Position numbers and translations under genes: made by a program. This document shows, piece by piece, positions 15,182 through 63,807 of a stretch of DNA of 64,000 nucleotides. The notes below the pieces were generated by a model. That model ran no database searches and had not been told where the DNA came from. It saw nothing but the letters and a program-made list of their open reading frames with translations. Position 1 is the stretch's first letter. Each line of letters opens with the position of its first letter. Origin of the DNA: Podarcis vaucheri (taxonomy: Eukaryota); NCBI GenBank assembly GCA_965113315.1, contig OZ220363.1. The stretch is one strand, 5' to 3'.

Positions 15182-16399
15182 CTGAAACGGGAAGTAAAAC
15201 TGGATCAAGAGGATGAAAACACAATATATTATCCCTCTGCTCCAATCACCTGTGCGGAAGCCAGCTGATGACACATACTACTGTGGTCCTAGATTCACTA
15301 ACCAAGGGCTCATCCAGACTTCCTTTTGTGCTGCATTTCCAGGCATAGGTCTAGGCTTTAAAGCTCCGTGGCCAAGCAGTGTTTTTTGTTTGATTATTTG
15401 TTTGTTCCAGCACTTTCCTCAGGAAAACCCAGGTTTTAGTGCTGAATCAAAGCAAGCAACAGTGGAGCTCTCCAGAGATTGTCGTTTGCTCCTATTCAGT
15501 GGTAAAATGCAGGTTTTCGCAGGGAAACCGCCTAGACAAAAAAAAAAAAAAAGCACTCAGACACAGAGCTTTAAAGCATAGAGAGGACAGCGCAAATGGA
15601 AGTCTGAAGTGAGAAATCAAAGTATAAAACATGTAGTTTTACTAAGAAATAGTTCTGCTCCTTGTCCAACAGCAGGTTTTTTAAAAAGAGAAGTTGCTAC
15701 CACAAGCTGCTATCTTTCAGCCACAATATCGCTAGATATTATCTAAGGTATTAAAATCTCACAGAATACCTTGGTCAGAGTTCAGGCTTAAGAGTAATCA
15801 AGCAAGCATATATCAACTTTAAGCATGCTTATTTGGAGCAAACCTAGCTTCAGCATCTCAAGGCAAGGGAGGAGACTTAAAACGATGGCATTTGGAAGGT
15901 GGCTGGCAAACAGAAGCCAAGGAGTGAAAAGGGGCATTCTAGGCCCCAGCCCTGGGAGGGAGGAGCACTAGGCTAGTGCTCCCCTCCAGAGCAAACCACT
16001 GAGACAGGAGCTGCCCACCCAGTGGGGTGGAACAACATCAAAAGCCTCCAAGCTGGGGTGTCACGGCTGCTTACTGGGAGGAGAGAGGCCTTGGCAAGGT
16101 CAGGGCTGTGCATCCCTGTGCACCAGTGGATGCTCAGGATTGGCTCCATTCGTGTGCCAGCACAGCCCTGAACTCATTGCCACCTCCTCCTCCAGAGCAA
16201 ACAGCAGCAATGTTGCTGCCGGGAGGCTTCCTGCTGTGGCTCTGTCCTCTGCCTACCTGGCAAGCTGCTCCTGCTCTGGGAGGGGCCATTTTTAGAAGTA
16301 GTACCTTCCTCCCATTTACTGATACAGAATAGTAAGCTGCAAAACTACTCTCGCCATAGATACCAGTGGGAATTGAGAAAGCTTCACATCAAGACTTAC

Positions 16400-17079
16400 T
16401 TTGCCATTCCAGCGGCACACATGAGCGGGAATTCCTCCAAGTCATTTAGGTTAAGCTGGTCAGGTGGGGAACTTGTACAGACAGGGCTCACTTCACCTTG
16501 TTTCCTCTGCCTCAATGAACCCAGTGATGGACTGTCACCTTTTACTTCTTCGTTCAAGCCTCTGCCCGCGTCTGGCCGGCCAGAGGCACTTGCAGAGCCG
16601 ATGCCTTTTCTTCTGCCCCTCCTCGCTGGGGTAGCAACAAGGAAACTCCCTAAACTTATTTTCTGAGCAGAGCGCCTCTCGTTGCGAGAAAAAATGGGGC
16701 TTGAACCAAAACTCGTGCTGCTGCCAGAATCCGTATTTAGGCATTCGCTGAAAGAACCCAATAAGCTTGATCCCGTAATGACAGAAGATCCATGCGATTC
16801 CAAGGCAGAATTGCCGGTGATGGGAGTTGAATCAAAGAAAAGCTGCCCTCGACTACTGCCAGACCCTGCGATGCTACGAGACCTCCTTTCAGACCCCAGC
16901 CTTTGATTCCTGTAACTAGGAGAACTTCCCAGGAGCTTGGAGTTTGGTGCTTTAGCAGGAGTAGGCGGCCCATTGGTCAGTATCCGACTAGTCTGTTCCC
17001 TTAAATAATTCAGCAAAAAAGGCACAAAGTCTTTCTGAAGCAAGTTCAGGAGGGATAGCTTGGGGTGGACTTGGTTTTC
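16400..17079 (-). CDS. CDAN1: Codanin-1 exon 2
   Basis: ENQVHPKLSLLNLLQKDFVPFLLNYLREQTSRILTNGPPTPAK...LEEFP; AG acceptor, GTAAGT donor, 680 nt, phase 0-2. Confidence 0.93.
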
Positions 17080-18290: not shown

Positions 18291-19717
18291 CTACAGCCTT
18301 TTATACTGGGGAGTATTGTTTTTCTTTGTTATTATGTAATAAACAACAAGACTACAACGGAAACATAAGCTTCCAGTCTCCTCACAATGGAACAGGAGGT
18401 GGGGTGAGAACACATGAACCCAATATTCACTGTAGCTCATTTTTTCTAACACTATGCCATAACATTTAGCATTACCTCTGAACTCAACCACTGAACCATG
18501 ATTCTAGAAATTTTCATGCAATGCTTATTTTTTTTATCTTGTTCATACAATGTGACCATTAGGTGCAATAACTAGAGCTTTCCCTATCAACTACTGGTTA
18601 GCATCTTCGCTTTGTCAGGGGGAGTGTATTTTTCATTTAATTGGGCCAAGACAGAAGAACTGGCTAGTTCCCATCTTCCAGCCACACACCAAAGGCTGTG
18701 AGTGAGAACATTTTCACAAGTAACACAAAAAGTTTTAATCTGAAATTCATTGTTATGAATGCAGAGTACAGAAAACAGAAAAGCCACTTTGGAATCAGGT
18801 ATGCACAAGTTAGCATATGAAAACAAATACAAAAATATATTCAAACACTACTGACCCATTTCACACTAACAGGCTGTGGCATTCATCAGACATAAAATTA
18901 AGTGATTTAGACTTCAGTCCTATGCATGTTTAGATAGAAGCCCCAATGAACTAAAAGAAACTTATTTCTAAGTAGATCTACACAGAACTGGCCTGTTAAT
19001 CATCACCTAAGAATCCCTAGCCCTATACAAGATACTTAGAGGGAGGGAGGATATAGTATGTGGAATCTGTTGCTTTAGACAGCTTCCTGCGCACTCTGAA
19101 CCCTGGTCGCTCGTTTCCCAGACGGTTATCCAACACCGTGCTTCAGGTAGACCAAAGACTAAAACTTTTCGATGCCTGCTCTCCTGTGTACCAGTCCCCC
19201 CTCCACGACATTTAGTGCATCCAGACCGCTTTGAAAATTATAGTCGTTCACACATGTGCAGAAGAGAGGCGTCAATGTGATTTCGACTACGACTGAAATC
19301 CTGTGCACGGTTATTTGCAACTTCCAACGAATTCTGTAGGTCTTGTTTCTGAATCATTAAAGCTGCATATGGGAAGGACTCGTAAGGGCGCACAGCAACT
19401 CAGTCCCACCAACTCCACAGCAGGGTTCTCAGGTTCAGTGAAGGGCTCCCTCAGGGGGGCACATATATACACCTGGGCTCCCGAAAAGCTACCGCAAGAG
19501 CCCTTCAGGAGCTCACATAGCGCAGGCCTGAAGGCTGCAGCTTCCCACTTAGCATCCCGCCAGAGGAGAAAACCTCAAGTGGTCGACCTGTTTTTCCCCC
19601 CTCCCGCCTCCCTTTTGGAGCGCAGAGTTTTGAAGGCCGGCATCAACTCCGTTTTCCCGGAAACTTCCCGCTCGAACCGAGGGCTGGGTGAAGCAAGGGC
19701 GGCGCTGCGCGTTTTAC

Positions 19718-19813
19718 CTCCAAGGCGCAGGGGCTCTGGCTCGCCTTCAGCCACCGCACGACAGCGCTGGCTGCCACTTCGTCCTGCAGCAACAGCTCCA
19801 AAACAGCCGCCAT
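19718..19813 (-). CDS. CDAN1: Codanin-1 coding exon 1 (MAAVLELLLQDEVAASAVVRWLKASQSPCALE)
   Basis: Hand translation resembles the codanin-1 N-terminus (MAAVLESLL...AVVRW); 96 nt, donor GTAAAA, phase 0; lies in the CpG island. Confidence 0.92.
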
Positions 19814-20589
19814 GCCCACCTCTCTCCTCCTCTAGCACTACCGCGCGGGCGCCACCCCTCGACGCCGTCCCAAAAGCCGCCAAAAAGCCCTTAAAAAAAA
19901 GGAGCAGCGAAAAAAACCACACCACACACGGGGGGCGTGTTCTAATTCGCTTCTAACTCCGGGTTAGAGCGCAGCACGTGGAGGATGGGTGGGGAAAGAG
20001 AGAGGAGGCGCACTGATAGAACGCCAGGCGCGGGGGCCGCCAGGGAGAGCCAGCGCGCGCCCCACCCCGGACGCTCGCGGCCACCGCCGTCCCTCCCTCC
20101 CTCCCTCCCAGGGAAGGCGGGATTAGAGCAAGCGCCCGGGCAGCAAGAAGCGCGCCCGCGCGCGCGCCGGCCCTGCCCTGGATCCCTCAGAACCGCCAGT
20201 CTCTGGGAAAGTGGGCGTGGCTTCAGAACTCTCAGGCAGCAGCGCCCGCCGCCCGGCAAGGCTTCCCATTGGGAGGCGCGAATGCTTTAGTGGGCGGGGA
20301 TTGGCGCAAATGTAGGCAGGGCGGGCTGAGAGGAGGAGCCGCCGCCGAGGAGCAGCGGCACCAGCAGCGTTTCCTCTCCCCCCTCCCCTCCCGTGTCAAC
20401 AAGCGGGGCGCCTGCGCCGGGGGTTTGCGCGTCTTTTCCTCTCATGCGCGGTATTTGCTTCCCGAGTCGGGCCCGGGGTTTGGCCTAGAGCCGGCGGCGG
20501 GCAGAGGGCGCAGCGCGATCGGGCGCAGTGCTCCGGCCGCAGCGGCTCCCGCCGGGCGGGCGATCGATCGGTCGGTCCGCTGGCTCAGG

Positions 20590-21043
20590 ATGGCGGACGA
20601 CTCCCCGAAGCGGCGCAAGGCCAACTTCAACGAGGCGGAGACGGAGGTGCTGATCGAGCAGGTGCTGAAGCACGAGCAGGTGCTGTTCGCGGCGGGGCCC
20701 GGCCGGGCCTCCCCGGGGCAGAAGCGCAAAGTGTGGGAGCTGATCCGGCACAAGGTGAACCCGGTGGCCGCCTGCCCGCGCGAGGTGGAGGACCTGAAGA
20801 AGCGCTGGCGGGACCTCAAGCGCCGCGACCGGAGCAAGCTCTGCCGCGTCACCCAGGGGCCCGTCCCGCACCCGGCCTCGCTCGGCCTCCTCATGGCCGC
20901 CGAGGACATCTCGCCCCCCGACCACCTCCGATCCTATGCCCCGGGGATGGCCGCCGCCGCCGCCAGCGAGGCGCTGCCCATCGTCGGCGGCATCGACACG
21001 CTCGACTTGCCCGGAGCTGCCGCCGCTTCGGTGGCGGAGATCG
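20590..21043 (+). CDS. Myb/SANT-like (Myb_DNA-bind_5 / NAIF1-MSANTD type) DNA-binding protein, coding exon 1
   Basis: Strong Kozak context cAGGATGG; MADDSPKRRKANFNEAETEVLIEQVLKHEQVLF...KRKVWELIRHKVN...REVEDLKKRWRDLKRR fits the trihelix pattern RKxNF..E..L...W..I...VN...R....KKRW.DLK; donor G/GTGAGT, 454 nt, phase 1. Confidence 0.9.
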
Positions 21044-23059
21044 GTGAGTAGGGAAAAGAGGGAGGCGGGCAGCAGGGAGCCCCTTTCTCTGGTGCGATCC
21101 TGCCTTTCCCCCCGCGCAAGTCGGGGCTCCTTCTCTCACAGCTGGTGCCTTGTGTATGGGCTGCCCTTCTCACCCCACAAAACCTGGAAGCGGGGCGAGG
21201 GACCGCTTCCGTCCTCTACCCGCTACAGAGCTTTCCCTGCTGTGCCTTTTCTCTGTCCTCACAGCTTTTGGAACAGTTGCAGATGCTCAGGATCGCTCGC
21301 CATATCCCATCCCCGCTTTCCCCATTGACTGGGATTGCGCCATAAAAAGTATCAGAAAGCTTGCCTCGAGGATAGGTTTTTAGGGTCCAAGAGTCGACAA
21401 TTGGGCCTTTCTGTTGTGAAGGATGCTTTCACAACGGGACAAGCGAATTATATGCTAAAGTTAGTGAGTCACTTGTGAACATAAGTTATCTAACTCAGTC
21501 TCCTCTACGCTTAAAGGCAAGGGTGCTCTGTCTCGGATGTTTCACACTGGAGTCTTTTGTAGTACTACTCCAGAGATGCTGGGGACTGAACCTTATCTAT
21601 TTTTTGGCATATATTATATATTGCCCTTTTTACCTTTTGCATGCATACCATGTGCTCTGCAGTCACCCTTGTGTTTTAATGTCAATCTGGAGGAGAAGGT
21701 GGAAGCAAGTCCATTTTAATTCAGTCTCCACTCTAGCTGAAATAAACATTGCATTGTTTCAAAGGCCAGGAAACTAAAAAAGCAATTTGCATATTACTTA
21801 TGAAAAATAGACCTTCGGCCTATTAAGGTGCTTGCCTATTTGTTTTTCCAACTTTTCATTCCAAGCACAGTCATCTAATACTCTTCACTTTTTTGCAAAT
21901 GTTATTTGCTGTTAGGTACTCAGAACTTCAATCTATGGGTATGTCTACATGCAACATGTCTAGTTTGCAGCTTCAGTTCAGAATTTGAAATGCCTGCAGC
22001 AGTATACAAAACGAGGCAGCATTTTTCGCCACCTTCCCCGTTATAGATTATCAGTCATTTCTACTTAATCAATGTGATGACCAGCAAGGGGTATTGGATA
22101 GGTGCTGAGCATCTTTTGTCTGTCCGTCCCCCCCCCCACCCACATTTGTGTCCCACCTCTCCTCCCAACTGCTCAGGATAGCACACATAGGGTGGTCAGA
22201 TTTGAAATGATCTCACCAATTGTTGTCCTACTCTTTGTTTCCTACATGATGCTAGCAAGGCATTCCGCTCAAAAAGCTTCTTCATCCCATTAAGAGTTTT
22301 GTTTCTCTGACACAATTGTGCATATGTTTCTTTTTAAAAGATGAGGAACTGTCTAATAATAACTGGGTGCAATCTTAATCACAGACCAAGGCATGATACA
22401 TAATTTAGCTCAGGGATGGGGAACCTTTTTGACCCTATGGGCCAACTTTGACAGGTGGGTTGAACAATCTGTCAGTCACCTGACATAATGATGGCAGTTA
22501 TTGACAGGTGGGTTGTCCCACCCACCTGCAAAAATCTCTTGCATAAGGGTTCCAGAGTGCCCAGCAGCCTGCTGGTTGTCAGGTTCTTGGGAACGGCATC
22601 ACAAACAGCTTAGCAAGTACCAAACACAGAGCTGGCAAAGCTGCTTTCTGCAGGAATTGGCTATGAGATCAAGTGCCACATTGGAAAACATAGCTAGTGG
22701 TACCGTTGAATATCACTGTCTCTTTAAAAATTATTGGAAGTGGTTTTTAAGTCCTTGAGCAGAACAGATGTCTTGTGCAACTTTTCTTCCTCACTGCTGT
22801 TGAAAATTGGGGAGGGGGCTCCAGCACAGATGGGGGTGCAAGGGGCAAGAGCTATCGCAATGGCAGGTGTCACCTAATTAGCAGACACGTTTCATGTATA
22901 TCTTAATCACCAGGTGAAGCTAAACACTCAATAAAAACTCTGTTGTCTAGAGATAAATTTAGGCAACATTTTATGTGGTTATGATAGGCTGGTAGCCAGA
23001 AGCTGAATCCCCAAAGAGAGTGAAGCCTAACCTCTTTTCTCCCCCTCCTCTATTTTTAG

Positions 23060-23712
23060 GTTTTACAGATGATCCAGGCCCATCCCACCAGCCATGTGTG
23101 GAGAAGATGAATCTAAAAGAAGAAATAGTAGTCAAAGTCGTGGAGCCAGAAGAAAGTTCAGAGGACATGTCCGTAGTTCCTCCTAGCCAGGAGCCACTCC
23201 CTTTTTTGGGGTTGCCAAATGGAGGCCCCTGTGGAAAAGTAAAAGCCAAAACAAAAACTCAGCCGCAGATAGACCCCAGTGAAATTACAGAAGAGGAACT
23301 CCTGCAGATCCAACAGAACCAGCTCCACATCATCCAGTCTGGCTTTGACACAATCAACCACAATCTCCGGCTGCTGCAGCAAGGCATGCAAGATCTCAAC
23401 AACAGCCTCAGCATGGCAGCACACACTTTAGTGGCGATTAAAAATGTCTACGTGAAAAACAATGCTGGCCCAACCACCTTTGCTACGGTGGCTACTCAGA
23501 CCACCTCGGGGTACTTGAGCCCTGGGTCCCCACTGGTGGAGGACAGAGTCAGAGCACCAATGGCTGGAAGCAGTAGCAGAAGCAGCAGCAGCTGCAGCTC
23601 CAGCTCCATGTCGCAAGAGCCAGGCCCGTCAGAATTCCCCAGGCCCCCCCACAGAACCATTAAGAAGGAGCATCCCAATGGCTGCTACTATTTCTGTTTT
23701 GCAGATGTGTAA
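23060..23712 (+). CDS. Myb/SANT-like protein, coding exon 2 (coiled coil, Ser-rich tail, stop)
   Basis: Pyrimidine tract plus TTTTTAG acceptor whose phase matches exon 1; open frame to TAA at 23710-23712; joined CDS 1107 nt = 368 aa. Confidence 0.87.
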
Positions 23713-24815
23713 GACTTGAATGCGATGTTACTTGAGAAGGGGCTGTTTTGTACCCCACTCAAGAATGCGTCGTCATCACAGAGCGGGCTTGCCTTGCCGC
23801 CGTCTACACTGCTAAATCTGTCAGAGCTCCACCACCGCCAGTTGGGGAAACCTTACATTGTAGGAGGCATAATGCTAACTGTTTTTACATGGATTTATTA
23901 TGGGCTTGTATTTGAATTGTTGTCGGCAACTCTGGGCAATGTGAGTGCATTGGAAGGGTGGGGTATAATTTTTTTAAACTACAGCTCTTAGAGCCCAGTC
24001 CTGTCTAGGCCTACTCAGGACTAGTGCCCAGTGCGTAGGATTGCAACATTAGTAGTTATCCTGTAGGTTCTGCAGCTGGTTGATACGTCTTACATTGCAT
24101 CTCCCCTGCTTTCTTTGCCAGTGGAGGAAGAGGAAATCTTGACTCATCTAGATCTTCCTGGTATTAATTTGACCTTTTAAAACAAAGAAGTATGAAAAGG
24201 GAGCAGCAAATTTATCTAGTATCTGGGGCAGAATTGATCATACATTCTGTTTTTATTTTTTAGCCAACCTAACTGCAGATTAGTGAGAATTTAGTACTTG
24301 ATTGTACTTTGTTAAAAAAACAAAGAAAAGCTGCCTAATAGTACTACTACTGTAAGGAGCACATGGAGTTTGTCTGTTGTGGGACTGGGAATGAATGTGG
24401 GTGCTGAGCCACAAGCCAAGTGCTTTAAATTTTCCTTGCTCGTCATTCTTCGTTGCTCATGTCCAGCTCCTCAAAATGCATCTTCCCTGCTGACAACATG
24501 CAGTCGTGGGGAGGCTGCCTTACGTTGCATAATTAAAGAAAATTTTCCAAAAAAGAAAGAATCCGAGTGCTGAATGTGCTTGATACTCATCAGCAGAGTG
24601 AATCTGCTCCCTGTGAGGGTATGTGTGGTACTTAGATGCTGCAAAACACATTATTGGACCCCTGTTTTGGATGTAGTTTGAAATAATGATTTAGCGGTGC
24701 CTGATTGATCAGCAGCAAGCCTCCATCTCACACCCTCCACTGGATTATTTTATTCTGATCTGGGATTACTGGTTAGTTTAACGTATGCCTGGGATCATAA
24801 AGCATGGTTTGAGCC

Positions 24816-39818: not shown

Positions 39819-40289
<471 letters not shown>

Positions 40290-42324
40290 TCAAGAGAAAG
40301 AGAAGTTGATTAGTACCATTTCCTCCTCCTCCAGTGCCATGAGAAGGTCTGGGTAGGCTCATACTCCTTGATCTAAGAACAAAGGCACTTCTCTGTGTCC
40401 CCCTCTAGCAAAAGTCCAAGGGGTGGAGTTCTTTTCAGTGGCAGCTCCCCATCTGTAGAATGTTCTTTGCAGGGAAGCTCAGCTGGCACTGGCATTAACA
40501 ACCTTCTGCTGCCAGGTGAAATCCTCTCTTCCTACGTATTTGAGCATTAATATCACTGTGGTTCCTGTGGAAATTTTAGCTATGTATTTCTTGGTGATCG
40601 TGCTTATGTTGTGTATGGGATGGAGTAATCTGATTAATTATAATTAGTAGATGGCCACTTTTAATGTATTGTTGCTATTTTAAATGTTGTATTGGTATGG
40701 ATTTTTTATTCTTATAGGTCACTTTGAGGTACTTTTGTTGAAAGCAATGAATGCATTAACTCTACAATAACTACTACTACAATGTGGCATCTTTACTACT
40801 TATTTCCAGGCCTGGCCTAATGTGCTACTGTAAAAGGACCAAGGCAAATCAAGAACTGCCTTATCCTACAGGAAGCTGTCCAAGTCCTGGAATCAACCTG
40901 AGGTCCCGCTCTCTGTTCCATCATTGAGATGGGATGGGTAGATACAAGGAATATAGCTTTTTTAGTGATAACACCAAAGAGGAAAGGCCTCCCTCATGTG
41001 ATCCAGCAGGCTCCCTCTCTTCTTGCATCTAGGCAAGAACTCATTTGACAAGCACAAGAAACTGAACCTTTGATGCCATCAACCCAGTCCTGTGGAATAC
41101 TCTGCCAATAGAGATTCAGCAGGCAGCTTCTGCGCCAACTTTTAAATGCCTCCTGAAACTATTCCACAAGGCCTATGTGGGCGATTAAGAATACATCCTT
41201 CCACAATGGTTAACTGGTGAATGCTTTTAATTTTTTAACTTTTTATGGTTTTTATTGCATAATTTTTAAGTTTTATTGCTGTAAACTGATTTGATTTTTT
41301 TAAATGACATAGCAGTAAATAAATAAATTGAATAAATAATACATAGGAATAAGTATACTGCATGCATTCACTGTAAAATGCAAAATCTGGTATTTGACAC
41401 CCAATTTAGCATCCTAAAAGCAACTTTTAAACTTCAGTAAGTGTGGCTACAAAGCCTATAAGAATGCAATCTGCATTCAGAATCTGTACAAGTGCTGGTC
41501 AGGACAATCAGGAGGTCTTGGCTATTGTTCCTCGGTGATAATTTTTTTGTGACTTGAAGGCAGCATGTTACAATTTCCTGCAGTACAAAACCCTGTTTAA
41601 CGAGAATCCGTAGCAGGACAAGAGGAAAAAGAGAGAGAGTGTAGCGCAAAAAGCAAGAGCTGTCTCATACCGTCTTCAAAGTCTCTGAAAAGCCATGATT
41701 CTCAGCCATAATCTGCATTACCTTGTAAACACCACCCAGGAAAAGCTTTTGCTTGAAAGAAAAGCTACAAATAAAAAATATTTTGTTTCCGCTTACATTC
41801 TGCTATTATGTCCTTTAAATATTTAATAGTCAAAGGTCCAGCTTTAAGAAAAAGCATATGATCAGTTCTTGGTTGAGTGGTTGGTTGGTTTTTGGGTAAA
41901 TTAGACAAGGAATGGTAACAGAAAAGGTGTTTCCTTAATGGCATTACCCAAAGATACATGATAAGGAGTGGTTTATATCAAGAGTCATAGCTTGATTTTC
42001 TTACTATCATATCCAGCTCACTTGGTGTGTACTCTTATGTCTTTATAGGCAATCCAGGTTCACTTAAATCTAGAAGCAAAATGTTTTAGAAACCTAGTGT
42101 TTTAAATTAACATTGTATACAAATGTTGTTAATGTTCTTATTCAGGCAATTTTTTTCTGAATTTTGAAAGATAAAAATATTCTGTATGTGTGTATGCACA
42201 TAAGCTTGACTGCAGGTATTTGGGGGGGGGGGCGGAGAGTACTTAGTGCAATTTGCATGGTATCATACAAAGCCTTCCCAAAACTGCTCAAAGCTGCTTC
42301 AAAGGTGTAGCTGTTTTTACTTAC

Positions 42325-43589
42325 CTGGCTTCTACTCCAGGCCTTGTTGGTGGTCTTCCTGGTGGTGGACGAGGAAAAAACTGAGCTGAATTTGAACTGC
42401 TAACGTGATCTGTGGGAGTCCAAGATACGGGTCTTGGGATTTTGCTCTTTCTGGACTGAGGATTGCTTGGTGACAAAAAACTCTCCTCTACTTGGCTGTG
42501 CAAATGAGTGTCCAGTGTCAGTTTTGAAAAGGAGGACAACACATCTTCAGGAAGTGGTAATGGACCAGCAACTACTTTTTCTTTCAGTGACTTGTCAGAG
42601 GCACTTGAGAGGTCACCAAGGAAAGATTTGAGCTGTCTCTTTTCTACAAGCAATCTAACCAAGTCTGTCTGATGAGCCTTTTTTAGAAGCAGCTTCTCCT
42701 TTGCTGAAACAGGAGACGATTCTGATGAGGAGTCTACCTCTTGTGCTAAAACTGGAATGCGACTCTGTCTAGCCACGAATGCAGATCTAACTAACTCCTT
42801 CTTGGATGGATTAGAACTCTCATTCTCTGAACTGGAGTGCAACAATTCTCCATTTCTCTGGACATTTTGCTCTTCTTTCCCCTCTTGGTGCAAAAAGGTG
42901 GCAAGGTTCACCTGTTGGCATTGCAATTCTTCAGCATGATCAATATCCCCATCATCATGGAAACCATTTTCTTGCACTGGTACTACTTGGCTTTCCTGTT
43001 TTTGAGCAAATGGGTCAGTACTTCTTGATAAAGAAACATCTGATGTTTCGGCTGCTGACTGCTTCTGTAACTCCTGTTTTGCATCCTGATTTGGCAAGGA
43101 GGAGGAAGGAATTGGCCTCAGTTCTTCAGGTTCTGTAACAGCCAGAGGACCATCCAATACAGATTCAGTGTTTCCTTGAGCAGTTGAACATGGTCCTTCA
43201 ATCTGTATTTCAATATCATTTTCATAAGCCACAGGAAGCTGATTCTCTTCCACTTTTTCGAAGAGATTTTCTCCTTGTCTCTTCATGTATTGTTCAAGTA
43301 GGTCTGTTTGGCTATGATCTTGGATTCCAACACATTCTTCAATACACTCATCCTTTCCAATTGCCTCTAGGTTTTGGTCTAACTTGTGTACTACATCTGT
43401 TCTACTGCCACTAAGAGTTAGTGCATCGTTTGCCGCTGCCAAGCCAACCAAGTTCTCCTTAGGAGAGGAAAGTTCAACAGTATGTTCCAAAAGCCGAGGA
43501 TCCCGGTCCTTCTTCTCTAGTTGCTGGCCAAAATGAAAACTCTCAGAAGCAGACTGTGTGGATGCCATTGATGGTCTGGGTATTGTAAC
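42325..43589 (-). CDS. TTBK2: TTBK2 ~exon 14 (SxIP EB-binding motifs SRIP/SKIP; Pro-rich CEP164-binding segment)
   Basis: VTIPRPSMASTQS...RQSRIPVLAQE...RKSKIPRPVSW...PRPPPGRPPTRPGVEAR; 1265 nt, phase 0-2. Confidence 0.95.

Positions 43590-58134: not shown

Positions 58135-58233
<99 letters not shown>

Positions 58234-61414: not shown

Positions 61415-61513
<99 letters not shown>

Positions 61514-63639: not shown

Positions 63640-63807
<168 letters not shown>

What the first reader, a model, noticed from the sequence alone, without database searches (positions are those of the whole stretch)
20590..23712. Unnamed intact Myb/SANT-like gene between CDAN1 and TTBK2: candidate domesticated Harbinger DNA-binding gene
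Seen: a 368-aa two-exon ORF with a strong Kozak, a canonical phase-1 intron, an NLS-like SPKRRK, a trihelix Myb/SANT-like domain (RKANF..E...W..I...VN...KKRW.DLK), an IVGGIDT block and a heptad coiled coil. I found no TIRs and no DDE transposase ORF nearby. Known: PIF/Harbinger transposons encode this Myb-like protein, and vertebrate NAIF1 and MSANTD genes are domesticated versions of it. Inference: the C-terminus matches no NAIF1/MSANTD1-4/TSNARE1 sequence I recall, and I recall no gene between human CDAN1 and TTBK2. It may be a separate domestication kept in reptiles and lost in humans or mammals.
Basis: partly seen in the sequence, partly recalled or inferred. Interest (0 to 1): 0.85.

Follow-up and report, generated by a model that had tools for sequence, protein, structure and literature searches.

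The report
Unnamed conserved Myb/SANT-like gene beside CDAN1
This is a real, spliced and strongly conserved gene for a DNA-binding protein of the transposon-derived Myb/SANT-like family; it is found from lungfish to birds, has no counterpart among annotated mammal or frog proteins, and has never been named or studied.

Summary
A two-exon, 368-codon gene (20590-21043 and 23060-23712, + strand) lies between CDAN1 (- strand, ATG at 19813) and a tau-tubulin kinase best matching TTBK2 (- strand).

- Domain: exon 1 matches Pfam Myb_DNA-bind_5 (E 2e-21).
- Transcription: contigs from four runs in four studies skip exactly 21044-23059 (GT..AG) and end just after an ATTAAA at 24532.
- Selection: of 14 listed coding differences to close relatives, 11 are synonymous. 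All coding indels are multiples of three.
- Distribution: full-length orthologues exist in squamates, turtles, an alligator, many birds, caecilians, salamanders and a lungfish. All carry automatic names only ("uncharacterized LOC", "MYPOP-like", "NAIF1-like", "TSNARE1-like"). None was found in mammals, frogs or ray-finned fish.
- Phylogeny: in a Myb-domain tree the orthologues form their own supported clade, outside the TSNARE1 and MYPOP clades. Deeper nodes are unresolved.
- Transposon signs: no terminal inverted repeats or long repeat arms flank it. No tool scan for a transposase was run.

The gene is a new, unnamed member of the known family of Harbinger Myb-like-derived genes, at least about 400 million years old. 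A separate domestication event is possible but not shown. The likely function is a nuclear, coiled-coil DNA-binding regulator. Synteny in other species and absence from mammalian genomes could not be tested. The scan's only other notes sit on this same window.

The parts
19500..21100 (.). CpG island spanning the divergent 5' ends of CDAN1 (-) and the Myb/SANT-like gene (+); presumed bidirectional promoter
   Evidence: GC 68%, CpG observed/expected 0.91. GC is 72% in 20001-21000. The two ATGs are 776 bp apart. A transcript contig of run X5 runs 434 nt upstream of 20300.
19811..19813 (-). Start codon of the CDAN1 (codanin-1) neighbour, head-to-head with the gene
   Evidence: The - strand translation reads MAAVLELLLQDEVAASAVVRW.... 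The next exon, 16396-17043 (-), hits PDB Codanin-1 9cvc at E 1.7e-12.
20404..20589 (+). 5' UTR (minimum extent; the true start may lie further upstream)
   Evidence: The 2114-nt spliced contig of run X1 begins at 20404. The X5 contig continues upstream of 20300 (table 8).
20590..21043 (+). Coding exon 1 (151 codons plus the first base of a split Gly codon)
   Evidence: The start matches the orthologues' N-termini MAEDSPKRRK.
20602..20628 (+). SPKRRKANF, a basic NLS-like stretch at the start of the domain
   Evidence: S5-F13 are invariant in 21 orthologues from lizard to lungfish. Coordinates.
20614..20844 (+). Myb/SANT-like trihelix DNA-binding domain (Pfam PF13873 Myb_DNA-bind_5)
   Evidence: E 2.1e-21 on residues 9-85. 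AlphaFold2 helices 15-33, 42-56 and 66-88 have pLDDT 77-92. The top Foldseek matches are the Zeste DNA-binding domain on DNA and the GT-1 trihelix domain (weak, E 0.015).
20974..21015 (+). Conserved LPIVGGIDTLDLPG block in a region predicted to be disordered
   Evidence: P131 and G135 are invariant; G134, D137, T138, L139 and P142 are at least 90% conserved. Coordinates.
21044..23059 (+). Single phase-1 GT..AG intron (2016 nt)
   Evidence: Skipped exactly in contigs of runs X1, X5 and X9. Run X13 skips it with a small alignment offset (table 5).
23060..23712 (+). Coding exon 2 (two bases of the split codon, 216 codons and TAA)
   Evidence: It is 67-99% identical to orthologues from caecilian to Podarcis.
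23107..23166 (+). Conserved acidic block MNLKEEIVVKVVEPEESSED: an LKEE site fitting the sumoylation consensus, then a hydrophobic-acidic stretch resembling a SUMO-interaction motif (inference from the pattern only)
   Evidence: L172 and K173 are invariant; E174-K179, V181-E185, S187 and D189 are at least 90% conserved. The segment is predicted disordered.
23284..23463 (+). Long amphipathic helix with unbroken 3-4 heptad spacing (candidate coiled coil)
   Evidence: AlphaFold2 gives a single helix over residues 231-288 of P0001 with pLDDT 90-97. In the best register, 75% of a/d positions are hydrophobic against 24% of the others. The opening motif is shared weakly with coelacanth and shark/ray relatives.
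23509..23619 (+). GYLSPGSP and Ser-rich SSSRSSSSCSSSSMSQE region (likely phosphorylation-rich linker; inference)
   Evidence: Nearly invariant in tetrapods. A 3-nt in-frame length difference at 23581 is seen in a related species.
23659..23709 (+). C-terminal tail IKKEHPNGCYYFCFADV, specific to this orthologue group; IKKE fits the sumoylation consensus
   Evidence: Conserved from caecilian to birds and lizards. No match outside the orthologues ('tail' profile).
23713..24554 (+). 3' UTR with ATTAAA poly(A) signal at 24532-24537
   Evidence: The spliced contigs end at 24529-24554 (table 8). Signal located.
58135..58233 (-). Kinase-domain exon of the downstream, convergent tau-tubulin kinase gene (best match TTBK2)
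   Evidence: PDB 6vrf TTBK2 at E 3.7e-17. Further kinase motifs lie at 61415-61513 and 63640-63807. Long C-terminal exons on the - strand are at 39819-40286 and 42321-43568.

Best explanation
This is a genuine single-locus host gene, not a mobile element. It encodes a 368-residue nuclear protein with several parts. At the N-terminus is a Myb/SANT-like trihelix DNA-binding domain of the Myb_DNA-bind_5 type, the type encoded by the second gene of PIF/Harbinger transposons. After it come conserved short motifs in disordered linkers, a helix of about 58 residues with heptad spacing, and a lineage-specific Ser-rich, Cys/aromatic tail. The gene is transcribed from a CpG island shared head-to-head with CDAN1, spliced once, and polyadenylated about 0.8 kb after the stop codon. 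It forms its own orthologous group, found in lungfish, caecilians, salamanders, turtles, crocodilians, birds and squamates, and distinct from TSNARE1 and MYPOP. NAIF1 and MSANTD1-4 were not placed in the tree; they did not appear among the named closest relatives. No orthologue appears in annotated mammalian or frog proteomes. Shown here: the gene model, transcription and splicing, domain membership, purifying selection, taxonomic spread, and a clade separate from TSNARE1 and MYPOP. Inferred: the protein enters the nucleus through the KRRK stretch, binds specific DNA through the basic third helix (VEDLKKRWRDLKRRDR, invariant over about 400 million years), self-associates or binds a partner through the coiled coil, and acts as a transcription or chromatin regulator, possibly controlled by SUMO. 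The Harbinger origin is inferred from family membership, not from a transposon copy found here.
For: - Gene model and motifs.
- Domain: Pfam PF13873 at E 2.1e-21.
- Transcription: intron-less contigs of 1.5-2.7 kb from four runs in four studies join 21043 to 23060 and end at 24529-24554, next to ATTAAA.
- Selection: 11 of 14 listed coding differences in exon 2 are synonymous and the other 3 are conservative (V>A, E>D, L>M). Coding indels are +3, +9 and -3 nt, while 3' UTR indels include +5, +4, -4 and -1.
- Orthologues: 36 at E 1e-138 to 9e-43 with exon 2 alone. A lungfish orthologue turned up in the exhaustive HMMER search. The profile search shows a gap from E 5e-59 down to 1e-22 after the last orthologue.
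- Conservation: in 21 full-length orthologues, much of the Myb domain is invariant (for example A60-R81 with a single exception).
- Phylogeny: the orthologue clade has support 97/95 and branches roughly in species order. A TSNARE1 + coelacanth clade (96/90) excludes it, and MYPOP is separate (FastTree on 214 domains agrees).
- Structure: confident trihelix plus one long helix. The nearest solved folds are the Zeste and GT-1 DNA-binding domains. Heptad pattern.
- No terminal inverted repeats.
- Literature: TSNARE1, MYPOP, NAIF1 and MSANTD1-4 are regarded as Harbinger Myb-like derivatives (PMC9392472; bioRxiv 10.1101/2021.02.09.430442), and no paper mentions this gene or its LOC identifiers.
Against: - No DNA binding, nuclear localisation or dimerisation was measured. 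The homodimer prediction gave no verdict.
- The fold match is weak for the whole model (E 0.015).
- The runs are labelled 'RNA?' by guess, although intron-less contigs are hard to explain as genomic DNA. Tissue and expression level are unknown.
- Table 3 lists only the best-supported differences (29 were not shown), so the synonymous-to-nonsynonymous count is a sample, not a dN/dS estimate.
- Absence from mammals and frogs rests on protein databases, not on genome searches.
- No bona fide Harbinger element with a transposase next to a close Myb-like relative was identified here.
Confidence: 0.85

Rival explanations
1. The gene arose by an independent domestication of a Harbinger Myb-like gene in the lungfish-tetrapod ancestor, separate from the events that gave TSNARE1, MYPOP, NAIF1 and MSANTD1-4.
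For: It forms a clade of its own, outside the TSNARE1 and MYPOP clades. No clear orthologue was found in coelacanth, ray-finned or cartilaginous fish. The literature argues for recurrent independent domestications in this family (PMC9392472). Salamander sequences that may be transposon copies sit in the same polytomy.
Against: The deep nodes are unresolved with only 82 alignment columns. No transposon-borne sister sequence was identified. Shark/ray proteins of 358-380 residues share the overall layout and 45-47% domain identity, so they could be older orthologues or paralogues.
Confidence: 0.35
2. The gene is a paralogue made by duplication of an already domesticated family member (the TSNARE1, MYPOP or shark 'MYPOP-like' lineage), possibly older than sarcopterygians and then lost in several lineages.
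For: The layout is shared across the family: an N-terminal domain at residues ~5-90, then an acidic linker, then a helix opening with (S/T)E..(L/I)L..QQ.Q. The helix start shows weak collinear matches in coelacanth and shark/ray proteins (E 3e-4 to 7e-3 in a set of 225 sequences). The language-model feature search placed exon 2 near an NAIF1 cluster at 0.77, which is only a lead.
Against: The matches outside the domain are weak and partly explained by coiled-coil composition. Transposon-encoded Myb-like proteins may have the same layout, so a shared layout does not distinguish duplication from re-domestication.
Confidence: 0.4
3. It is a still-mobile or recently inserted Harbinger-type element, or a decaying copy of one.
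For: Only the domain family.
Against: There are no terminal inverted repeats, and no transposase-sized ORF appears among the mechanically listed ORFs nearby; none of these was scanned against a transposase profile. The gene has a spliceosomal intron, a CpG-island promoter and a poly(A) signal. Orthologues track the species tree over about 400 million years with a near-invariant domain. Synonymous changes are in excess and coding indels are in frame.
Confidence: 0.02
4. It is the orthologue of a named gene (TSNARE1, MYPOP or NAIF1) that automatic annotation failed to recognise.
For: RefSeq names for the orthologues include 'MYPOP-like', 'NAIF1-like' and 'TSNARE1-like'.
Against: Those names are similarity labels, and they disagree with each other. 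Several taxa carry this gene alongside separate TSNARE1-like or MYPOP-like genes: lungfish P0046 and P0087, Tiliqua P0009 and P0161, and birds with P0015-type genes as well as P0072 and P0094. In the tree, TSNARE1 and MYPOP form other supported clades. There is no SNARE domain.
Confidence: 0.03

Closest known systems
TSNARE1 (Myb-like modules of t-SNARE domain-containing protein 1)
   Same: Closest named mammalian relatives of the domain: 40-43% identity, E 3e-31 and 3e-26 for horse and meerkat proteins with two modules. Same Pfam family. Regarded as Harbinger-derived (bioRxiv 10.1101/2021.02.09.430442).
   Different: This gene has no SNARE domain. It carries one Myb module, not one or two fused to a syntaxin-like part. 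TSNARE1 sits in a separate supported clade with coelacanth sequences (96/90). The chromosomal neighbourhood here is CDAN1-TTBK2.
MYPOP (p42POP, Myb-related transcription factor, partner of profilin)
   Same: Similar size and layout: an N-terminal Myb_DNA-bind_5 domain and a C-terminal helical region. Many orthologues are auto-named 'MYPOP-like'. Listed as a putative Harbinger derivative (PMC9392472).
   Different: The mammalian MYPOP cluster (P0105 and relatives) is a distinct, strongly supported clade. The linker and tail motifs are not shared.
NAIF1 (nuclear apoptosis-inducing factor 1), the Myb-like partner of HARBI1
   Same: The textbook domesticated Harbinger Myb-like protein: a nuclear trihelix domain plus a C-terminal helical part. 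Exon 2's language-model features fall near an NAIF1 cluster at 0.77, a lead only.
   Different: No verified NAIF1 was among the best 150 domain relatives, as far as these were named. No HARBI1-type partner gene is nearby, and an interaction with HARBI1 was not tested.
MSANTD1-4 (Etchegaray et al. 2022, PMC9392472)
   Same: [quoted passage not shown]
   Different: That survey started from human proteins and so could not find a gene that human lacks. None of the named proteins among the best relatives here is an MSANTD protein.
Zeste and plant GT-1 trihelix DNA-binding domains (PDB 5cqq, 2ebi/2jmw)
   Same: Nearest solved folds to the modelled domain: TM 0.70 on the target for Zeste bound to DNA. 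This supports sequence-specific DNA binding through the third helix.
   Different: Only 15-25% identity and a Foldseek E of 0.015 or worse. They resemble it in fold but are not orthologues.

Membership tests
Pfam PF13873 Myb_DNA-bind_5 (Myb/SANT-like trihelix domain) | Profile match above the curated gathering score | tested here: met
   76.1 bits against a cut-off of 21.7, E 2.1e-21, profile positions 1-77 of 78
Pfam PF13873 Myb_DNA-bind_5 (Myb/SANT-like trihelix domain) | Three-helix fold with conserved aromatic residues and a basic third helix | tested here: met
   AlphaFold2 helices 15-33, 42-56 and 66-88 at pLDDT 77-92. F13, F33, W49 and W73 are invariant. The best Foldseek matches are the Zeste and GT-1 domains (weak E).
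Domesticated Harbinger Myb-like genes (NAIF1 / MSANTD / TSNARE1 / MYPOP kind) | Fixed single locus without transposon termini or an adjacent transposase | tested here: inconclusive
   No terminal inverted repeats and no transposase-sized ORF listed between CDAN1 and TTBK2 in this window; the ORFs were not scanned against a transposase profile.
Domesticated Harbinger Myb-like genes (NAIF1 / MSANTD / TSNARE1 / MYPOP kind) | Orthologues across distant species, evolving under purifying selection | tested here: met
   Orthologues from lungfish to birds, with the clade branching in species order. Eleven synonymous against three conservative replacements, and in-frame indels only. Near-invariant domain.
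Domesticated Harbinger Myb-like genes (NAIF1 / MSANTD / TSNARE1 / MYPOP kind) | Demonstrated descent from a transposon-encoded Myb-like gene (a transposon sequence as sister) | tested here: inconclusive
   The tree places the clade in a polytomy with TSNARE1, MYPOP and unnamed fish and salamander sequences. None of these was verified as transposon-borne.
Domesticated Harbinger Myb-like genes (NAIF1 / MSANTD / TSNARE1 / MYPOP kind) | Transcribed and processed like a host gene | tested here: met
   Spliced contigs from four runs and a poly(A) signal.
TSNARE1 orthologue group | Myb-like module(s) fused to a Qa-SNARE domain; membership of the TSNARE1 clade | tested here: not met
   No SNARE domain in either exon. 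Excluded from the TSNARE1 clade, which has support 96/90.
MYPOP orthologue group | Membership of the MYPOP clade | tested here: not met
   The mammalian MYPOP cluster forms a separate clade with support 100/99.
Coiled-coil dimerising transcription factor (functional analogy) | Self-association through the heptad helix | tested here: inconclusive
   The heptad pattern and a confident long helix are present. The two-copy complex prediction returned no verdict.
Coiled-coil dimerising transcription factor (functional analogy) | Sequence-specific DNA binding and nuclear localisation | not testable with these tools
   Needs wet-lab assays.

The most novel reading that the evidence does not exclude
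The gene is an independent, roughly 400-million-year-old capture of a Harbinger Myb-like gene. It became a constrained transcription or chromatin regulator in lobe-finned vertebrates, is co-expressed with CDAN1 from a shared promoter, and was later lost separately in mammals and in frogs. That would make it a vertebrate regulator that human-centred surveys of domesticated transposon genes cannot see.
Probability: 0.3. Interest if true: 0.55.

Novelty: new member of a known kind. Interest (0 to 1): 0.45.

Why it matters
Catalogues of transposon-derived vertebrate genes have been built from the human proteome (PMC9392472), so genes lost in mammals are missed systematically. This locus adds an ancient and very strongly conserved member of the Harbinger Myb-like family, present in birds, reptiles, two amphibian orders and lungfish. 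It has only placeholder names and no literature. Its DNA-binding domain is nearly invariant, which points to an important conserved target. Its apparent loss in mammals and frogs gives a natural comparison for asking what the gene does. Chicken, Anolis and axolotl all carry it, so a function can be tested directly. The finding extends a known pattern and does not overturn one.

Tried and rejected
Synteny, intron positions and coding DNA of orthologues could therefore not be examined, and no formal dN/dS was computed.
- A search with the lungfish C-terminal half found only itself.
- hhalign of the orthologue alignment against coelacanth LOC102353983 aligned only the Myb domain.
- Separate profiles of the linker and tail found nothing outside the orthologues. 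The helix profile gave only weak matches.
- The complex-prediction run on two copies of the helix region returned 'no answer' (score 0.02). It counts neither for nor against dimerisation.
- Foldseek against the PDB gave no match at E <= 0.001 for the whole, mostly disordered model.
- The ESM Atlas gave only sub-threshold leads for exon 2 and nothing useful for the TTBK2 exon.
- PDB sequence searches with two long C-terminal TTBK2 ORFs found nothing. The kinase exon did hit.
- Exon 2 has only a sub-threshold Pfam hit, DUF5689 at E 0.025, which I dismissed.
- Literature searches for the gene's LOC identifiers and for sauropsid Harbinger domestications found nothing specific.
- The joined two-exon protein was deliberately not built or searched.
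- Human sequence was not consulted.
- The transposon reading and orthology to TSNARE1 or MYPOP were considered and rejected (see the rival explanations).
Full report

- An ATG at 20590 sits in a strong context (A at -3, G at +4) and opens a 454-nt coding exon that ends before GTGAGT at 21044.
- A polypyrimidine tract and AG end the intron at 23059.
- The frame continues from 23060 to a TAA at 23710-23712, through a split Gly codon.
- The model has 368 codons.
Each was searched by reference, and full-length work used the database orthologue P0001, which is 99% identical.

**Is it a real, expressed gene?** Exon 1 matches Pfam Myb_DNA-bind_5 far above threshold (76 bits against 21.7, E 2.1e-21, residues 9-85).

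Runs holding about 30% of the sampled words of 20300-24300 were found. That share is about what the two exons and the UTRs make up. Laying four of these runs (four studies, two related organisms) gave contigs of 1.5-2.7 kb:

- They cover 20300/20404-21042, skip 2016 nt with GT..AG ends, and resume at 23059/23060.
- They stop at 24529-24554, next to an ATTAAA at 24532-24537.
- The run type is only guessed to be RNA. Intron-less contigs at 7-30x depth, from organisms whose genome has the intron, are what a spliced mRNA would give.

The differences between those relatives and the window carry a coding signature:

- In exon 2, 11 of 14 listed differences are synonymous. The other three are V>A, E>D and L>M.
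- Coding indels are +3 and +9 nt in an Ala run and -3 nt in a Ser run.
- Indels in the 3' UTR include +5, +4, -4 and -1.
- The table shows only the best-supported differences, so this is a sample and not a dN/dS estimate.

**Surroundings.**

- Upstream on the - strand, the ORF 16396-17043 hits Codanin-1 in the PDB. A CDAN1-like first exon starts at 19813. The two start codons are 776 bp apart.
- Both lie in a CpG island (GC 68%, CpG observed/expected 0.91).
- Downstream on the - strand are long Ser/Pro-rich exons and kinase exons. One kinase exon hits the TTBK2 kinase domain at E 3.7e-17, with TTBK1 just behind.
- The order is therefore CDAN1 (-), this gene (+), TTBK2 (-): head-to-head with CDAN1 and tail-to-tail with TTBK2.
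- No credible terminal inverted repeats flank the gene, and no transposase-sized ORF stands out in the mechanical ORF lists. I ran no profile scan for a transposase.

**Relatives.**

- Exon 2 alone finds 36 proteins at E 1e-138 to 9e-43: Podarcis muralis (99%), geckos, snakes, agamids, iguanians, a skink, a sea turtle, many bird orders including palaeognaths, an alligator fragment, the caecilian Rhinatrema (67%), and the salamanders Ambystoma and Lissotriton (53% and 48%).
- All have automatic names: 'uncharacterized LOC...', 'MYPOP-like', 'NAIF1-like', 'TSNARE1-like', and one erroneous 'one cut domain' isoform.
- The exhaustive HMMER search with exon 1 added a lungfish protein, P0046. It is 59% identical in exon 1 by that search (53% by BLAST) and 44% identical across the helix.
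- A profile of 21 full-length orthologues found more birds, a second caecilian and Pleurodeles, then dropped from E 5e-59 to 1e-22.
- No mammal, frog, ray-finned or cartilaginous fish protein scores as an orthologue.
- The two databases cover each other's weakness. One is exhaustive but clustered at 50% identity. The other is clustered at 90% with names but depends on shared words. A mammalian orthologue as conserved as the caecilian one should have shown up in the second.
- This is absence from annotated proteomes, not from genomes.

**Conservation**. Much of the Myb domain is invariant from lizard to lungfish, for example AACPR.VEDLKKRWRDLKRRDR. Several blocks are nearly invariant in tetrapods:

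- LPIVGGIDTL.LPG
- LKEEIVVKVVEPEESSED..VVPPSQE
- GKVKAKTK
- the helix region
- GYLSPGSP
- the Ser run
- the tail IKKEHPNGCYYFCFADV

**Place in the family.**

- After the orthologues, the closest domains are the Myb modules of mammalian TSNARE1 (40-43% identity), coelacanth and lungfish 'TSNARE1-like' proteins, shark/ray proteins of 358-380 residues (45-47%), bird 'MYPOP-like' genes, and true MYPOP.
- FastTree on 214 domains and a careful IQ-TREE run on 55 both recover the orthologues as one supported clade (98; 97/95) that branches roughly in species order.
- TSNARE1, two coelacanth proteins and a sauropsid TSNARE1-like gene form another supported clade (96/90) that excludes the orthologues. 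MYPOP is a third clade.
- The nodes joining these clades are unresolved, with only 82 columns to work from.
- Several species carry this gene alongside separate TSNARE1-like or MYPOP-like genes.
- The gene is therefore a distinct member of the family. Whether it came from its own transposon capture or from duplication of an earlier captured gene cannot be decided here.
- Outside the domain, only the start of the helix ((S/T)E..(L/I)L..QQ.Q) shows weak, collinear similarity to coelacanth and shark/ray relatives. The linker motifs and the tail are specific to this group.

**Structure and likely mechanism.**

- AlphaFold2 on the orthologue alignment gives a confident three-helix domain (residues 15-88) and a single confident helix (231-288). 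Everything else is disordered.
- The best solved-structure matches of the model are the Zeste DNA-binding domain bound to DNA and the plant GT-1 trihelix domain. The whole-model E-value is only 0.015.
- The helix has unbroken 3-4 spacing: 75% of a/d positions are hydrophobic against 24% elsewhere.
- A two-copy complex prediction gave no verdict and is not used as evidence.
- From these points I infer a nuclear protein (invariant SPKRRKANF) that reads DNA with its basic third helix and pairs with itself or a partner through the coiled coil.
- The conserved disordered motifs may act as docking or modification sites. Two fit the psi-K-x-E sumoylation pattern and one resembles a SUMO-interaction motif. 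The motif readings rest on sequence pattern alone.
- The CpG island shared with CDAN1 suggests co-regulation with that gene, but this was not tested.

**Comparison with the literature.**

- Etchegaray et al. (PMC9392472) describe NAIF1 and MSANTD1-4 as Harbinger Myb-like derivatives. They list MYPOP, ZSCAN20, PRDM11 and TSNARE1 as further candidates.
- Their screen started from human proteins. They note explicitly that more such genes probably exist.
- The tSNARE1 preprint restates the Harbinger origin of TSNARE1.
- I found no paper that mentions this gene, its LOC identifiers, or a Myb-like gene next to CDAN1.

- This is a new, unnamed member of a known kind of gene. It is ancient (at least as old as the lungfish-tetrapod ancestor), strongly constrained, and apparently missing from mammals and frogs.
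- It is not reptile-specific, and a separate domestication has not been shown.
- Interest is moderate. The finding fills a blind spot of human-centred catalogues and gives a tractable candidate regulator, but it fits an established pattern.

**Limits.**

- No vertebrate genome search was available.
- Human sequence was not used.
- The joined protein was not built.

Noticed in passing
window:22402-22662: A short stretch inside the intron is matched by pieces of unrelated contigs in all four runs, some at high depth (75x in X13). It carries a local inverted repeat (22447-22478 / 22502-22533). It looks like a dispersed short repeat (SINE- or MITE-like) that is transcribed elsewhere.
   Followed up: no
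window:21018 and 23581: Length variation between related species in the poly-Ala run (+GCC, +GCCGCCGCC) and in the Ser run (-3 nt). Always in frame.
   Followed up: partly
window:19866-20433: One contig (X5) runs continuously from the gene's exon 1 to within about 50 nt of the CDAN1 start codon. Short opposite-oriented contigs in X1 and X9 cover 20300-20433 and then diverge. The 5' ends of the two divergent transcripts may overlap, or there may be an alternative first exon.
   Followed up: no
P0013 (Anolis carolinensis 'one cut domain family member 3 isoform X2') and P0053/P0190 (Latimeria 'RPC6' isoforms), P0145 (Discoglossus 'ANKRD16'): Several RefSeq or GenBank models fuse Myb/SANT-like exons to neighbouring genes, or name them after those genes. 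These are probable annotation chimeras.
   Followed up: no
P0072, P0161 (Leptosomus, Tiliqua) and P0094, P0100 (Sylvia, Coturnix): Sauropsids carry at least two more unnamed Myb_DNA-bind_5 gene lineages ('TSNARE1-like' of 585 residues, and 'MYPOP-like' of about 330-405 residues). Both form tight clades of their own, so the family has more unstudied non-mammalian members.
   Followed up: partly
I did not examine it.
   Followed up: no
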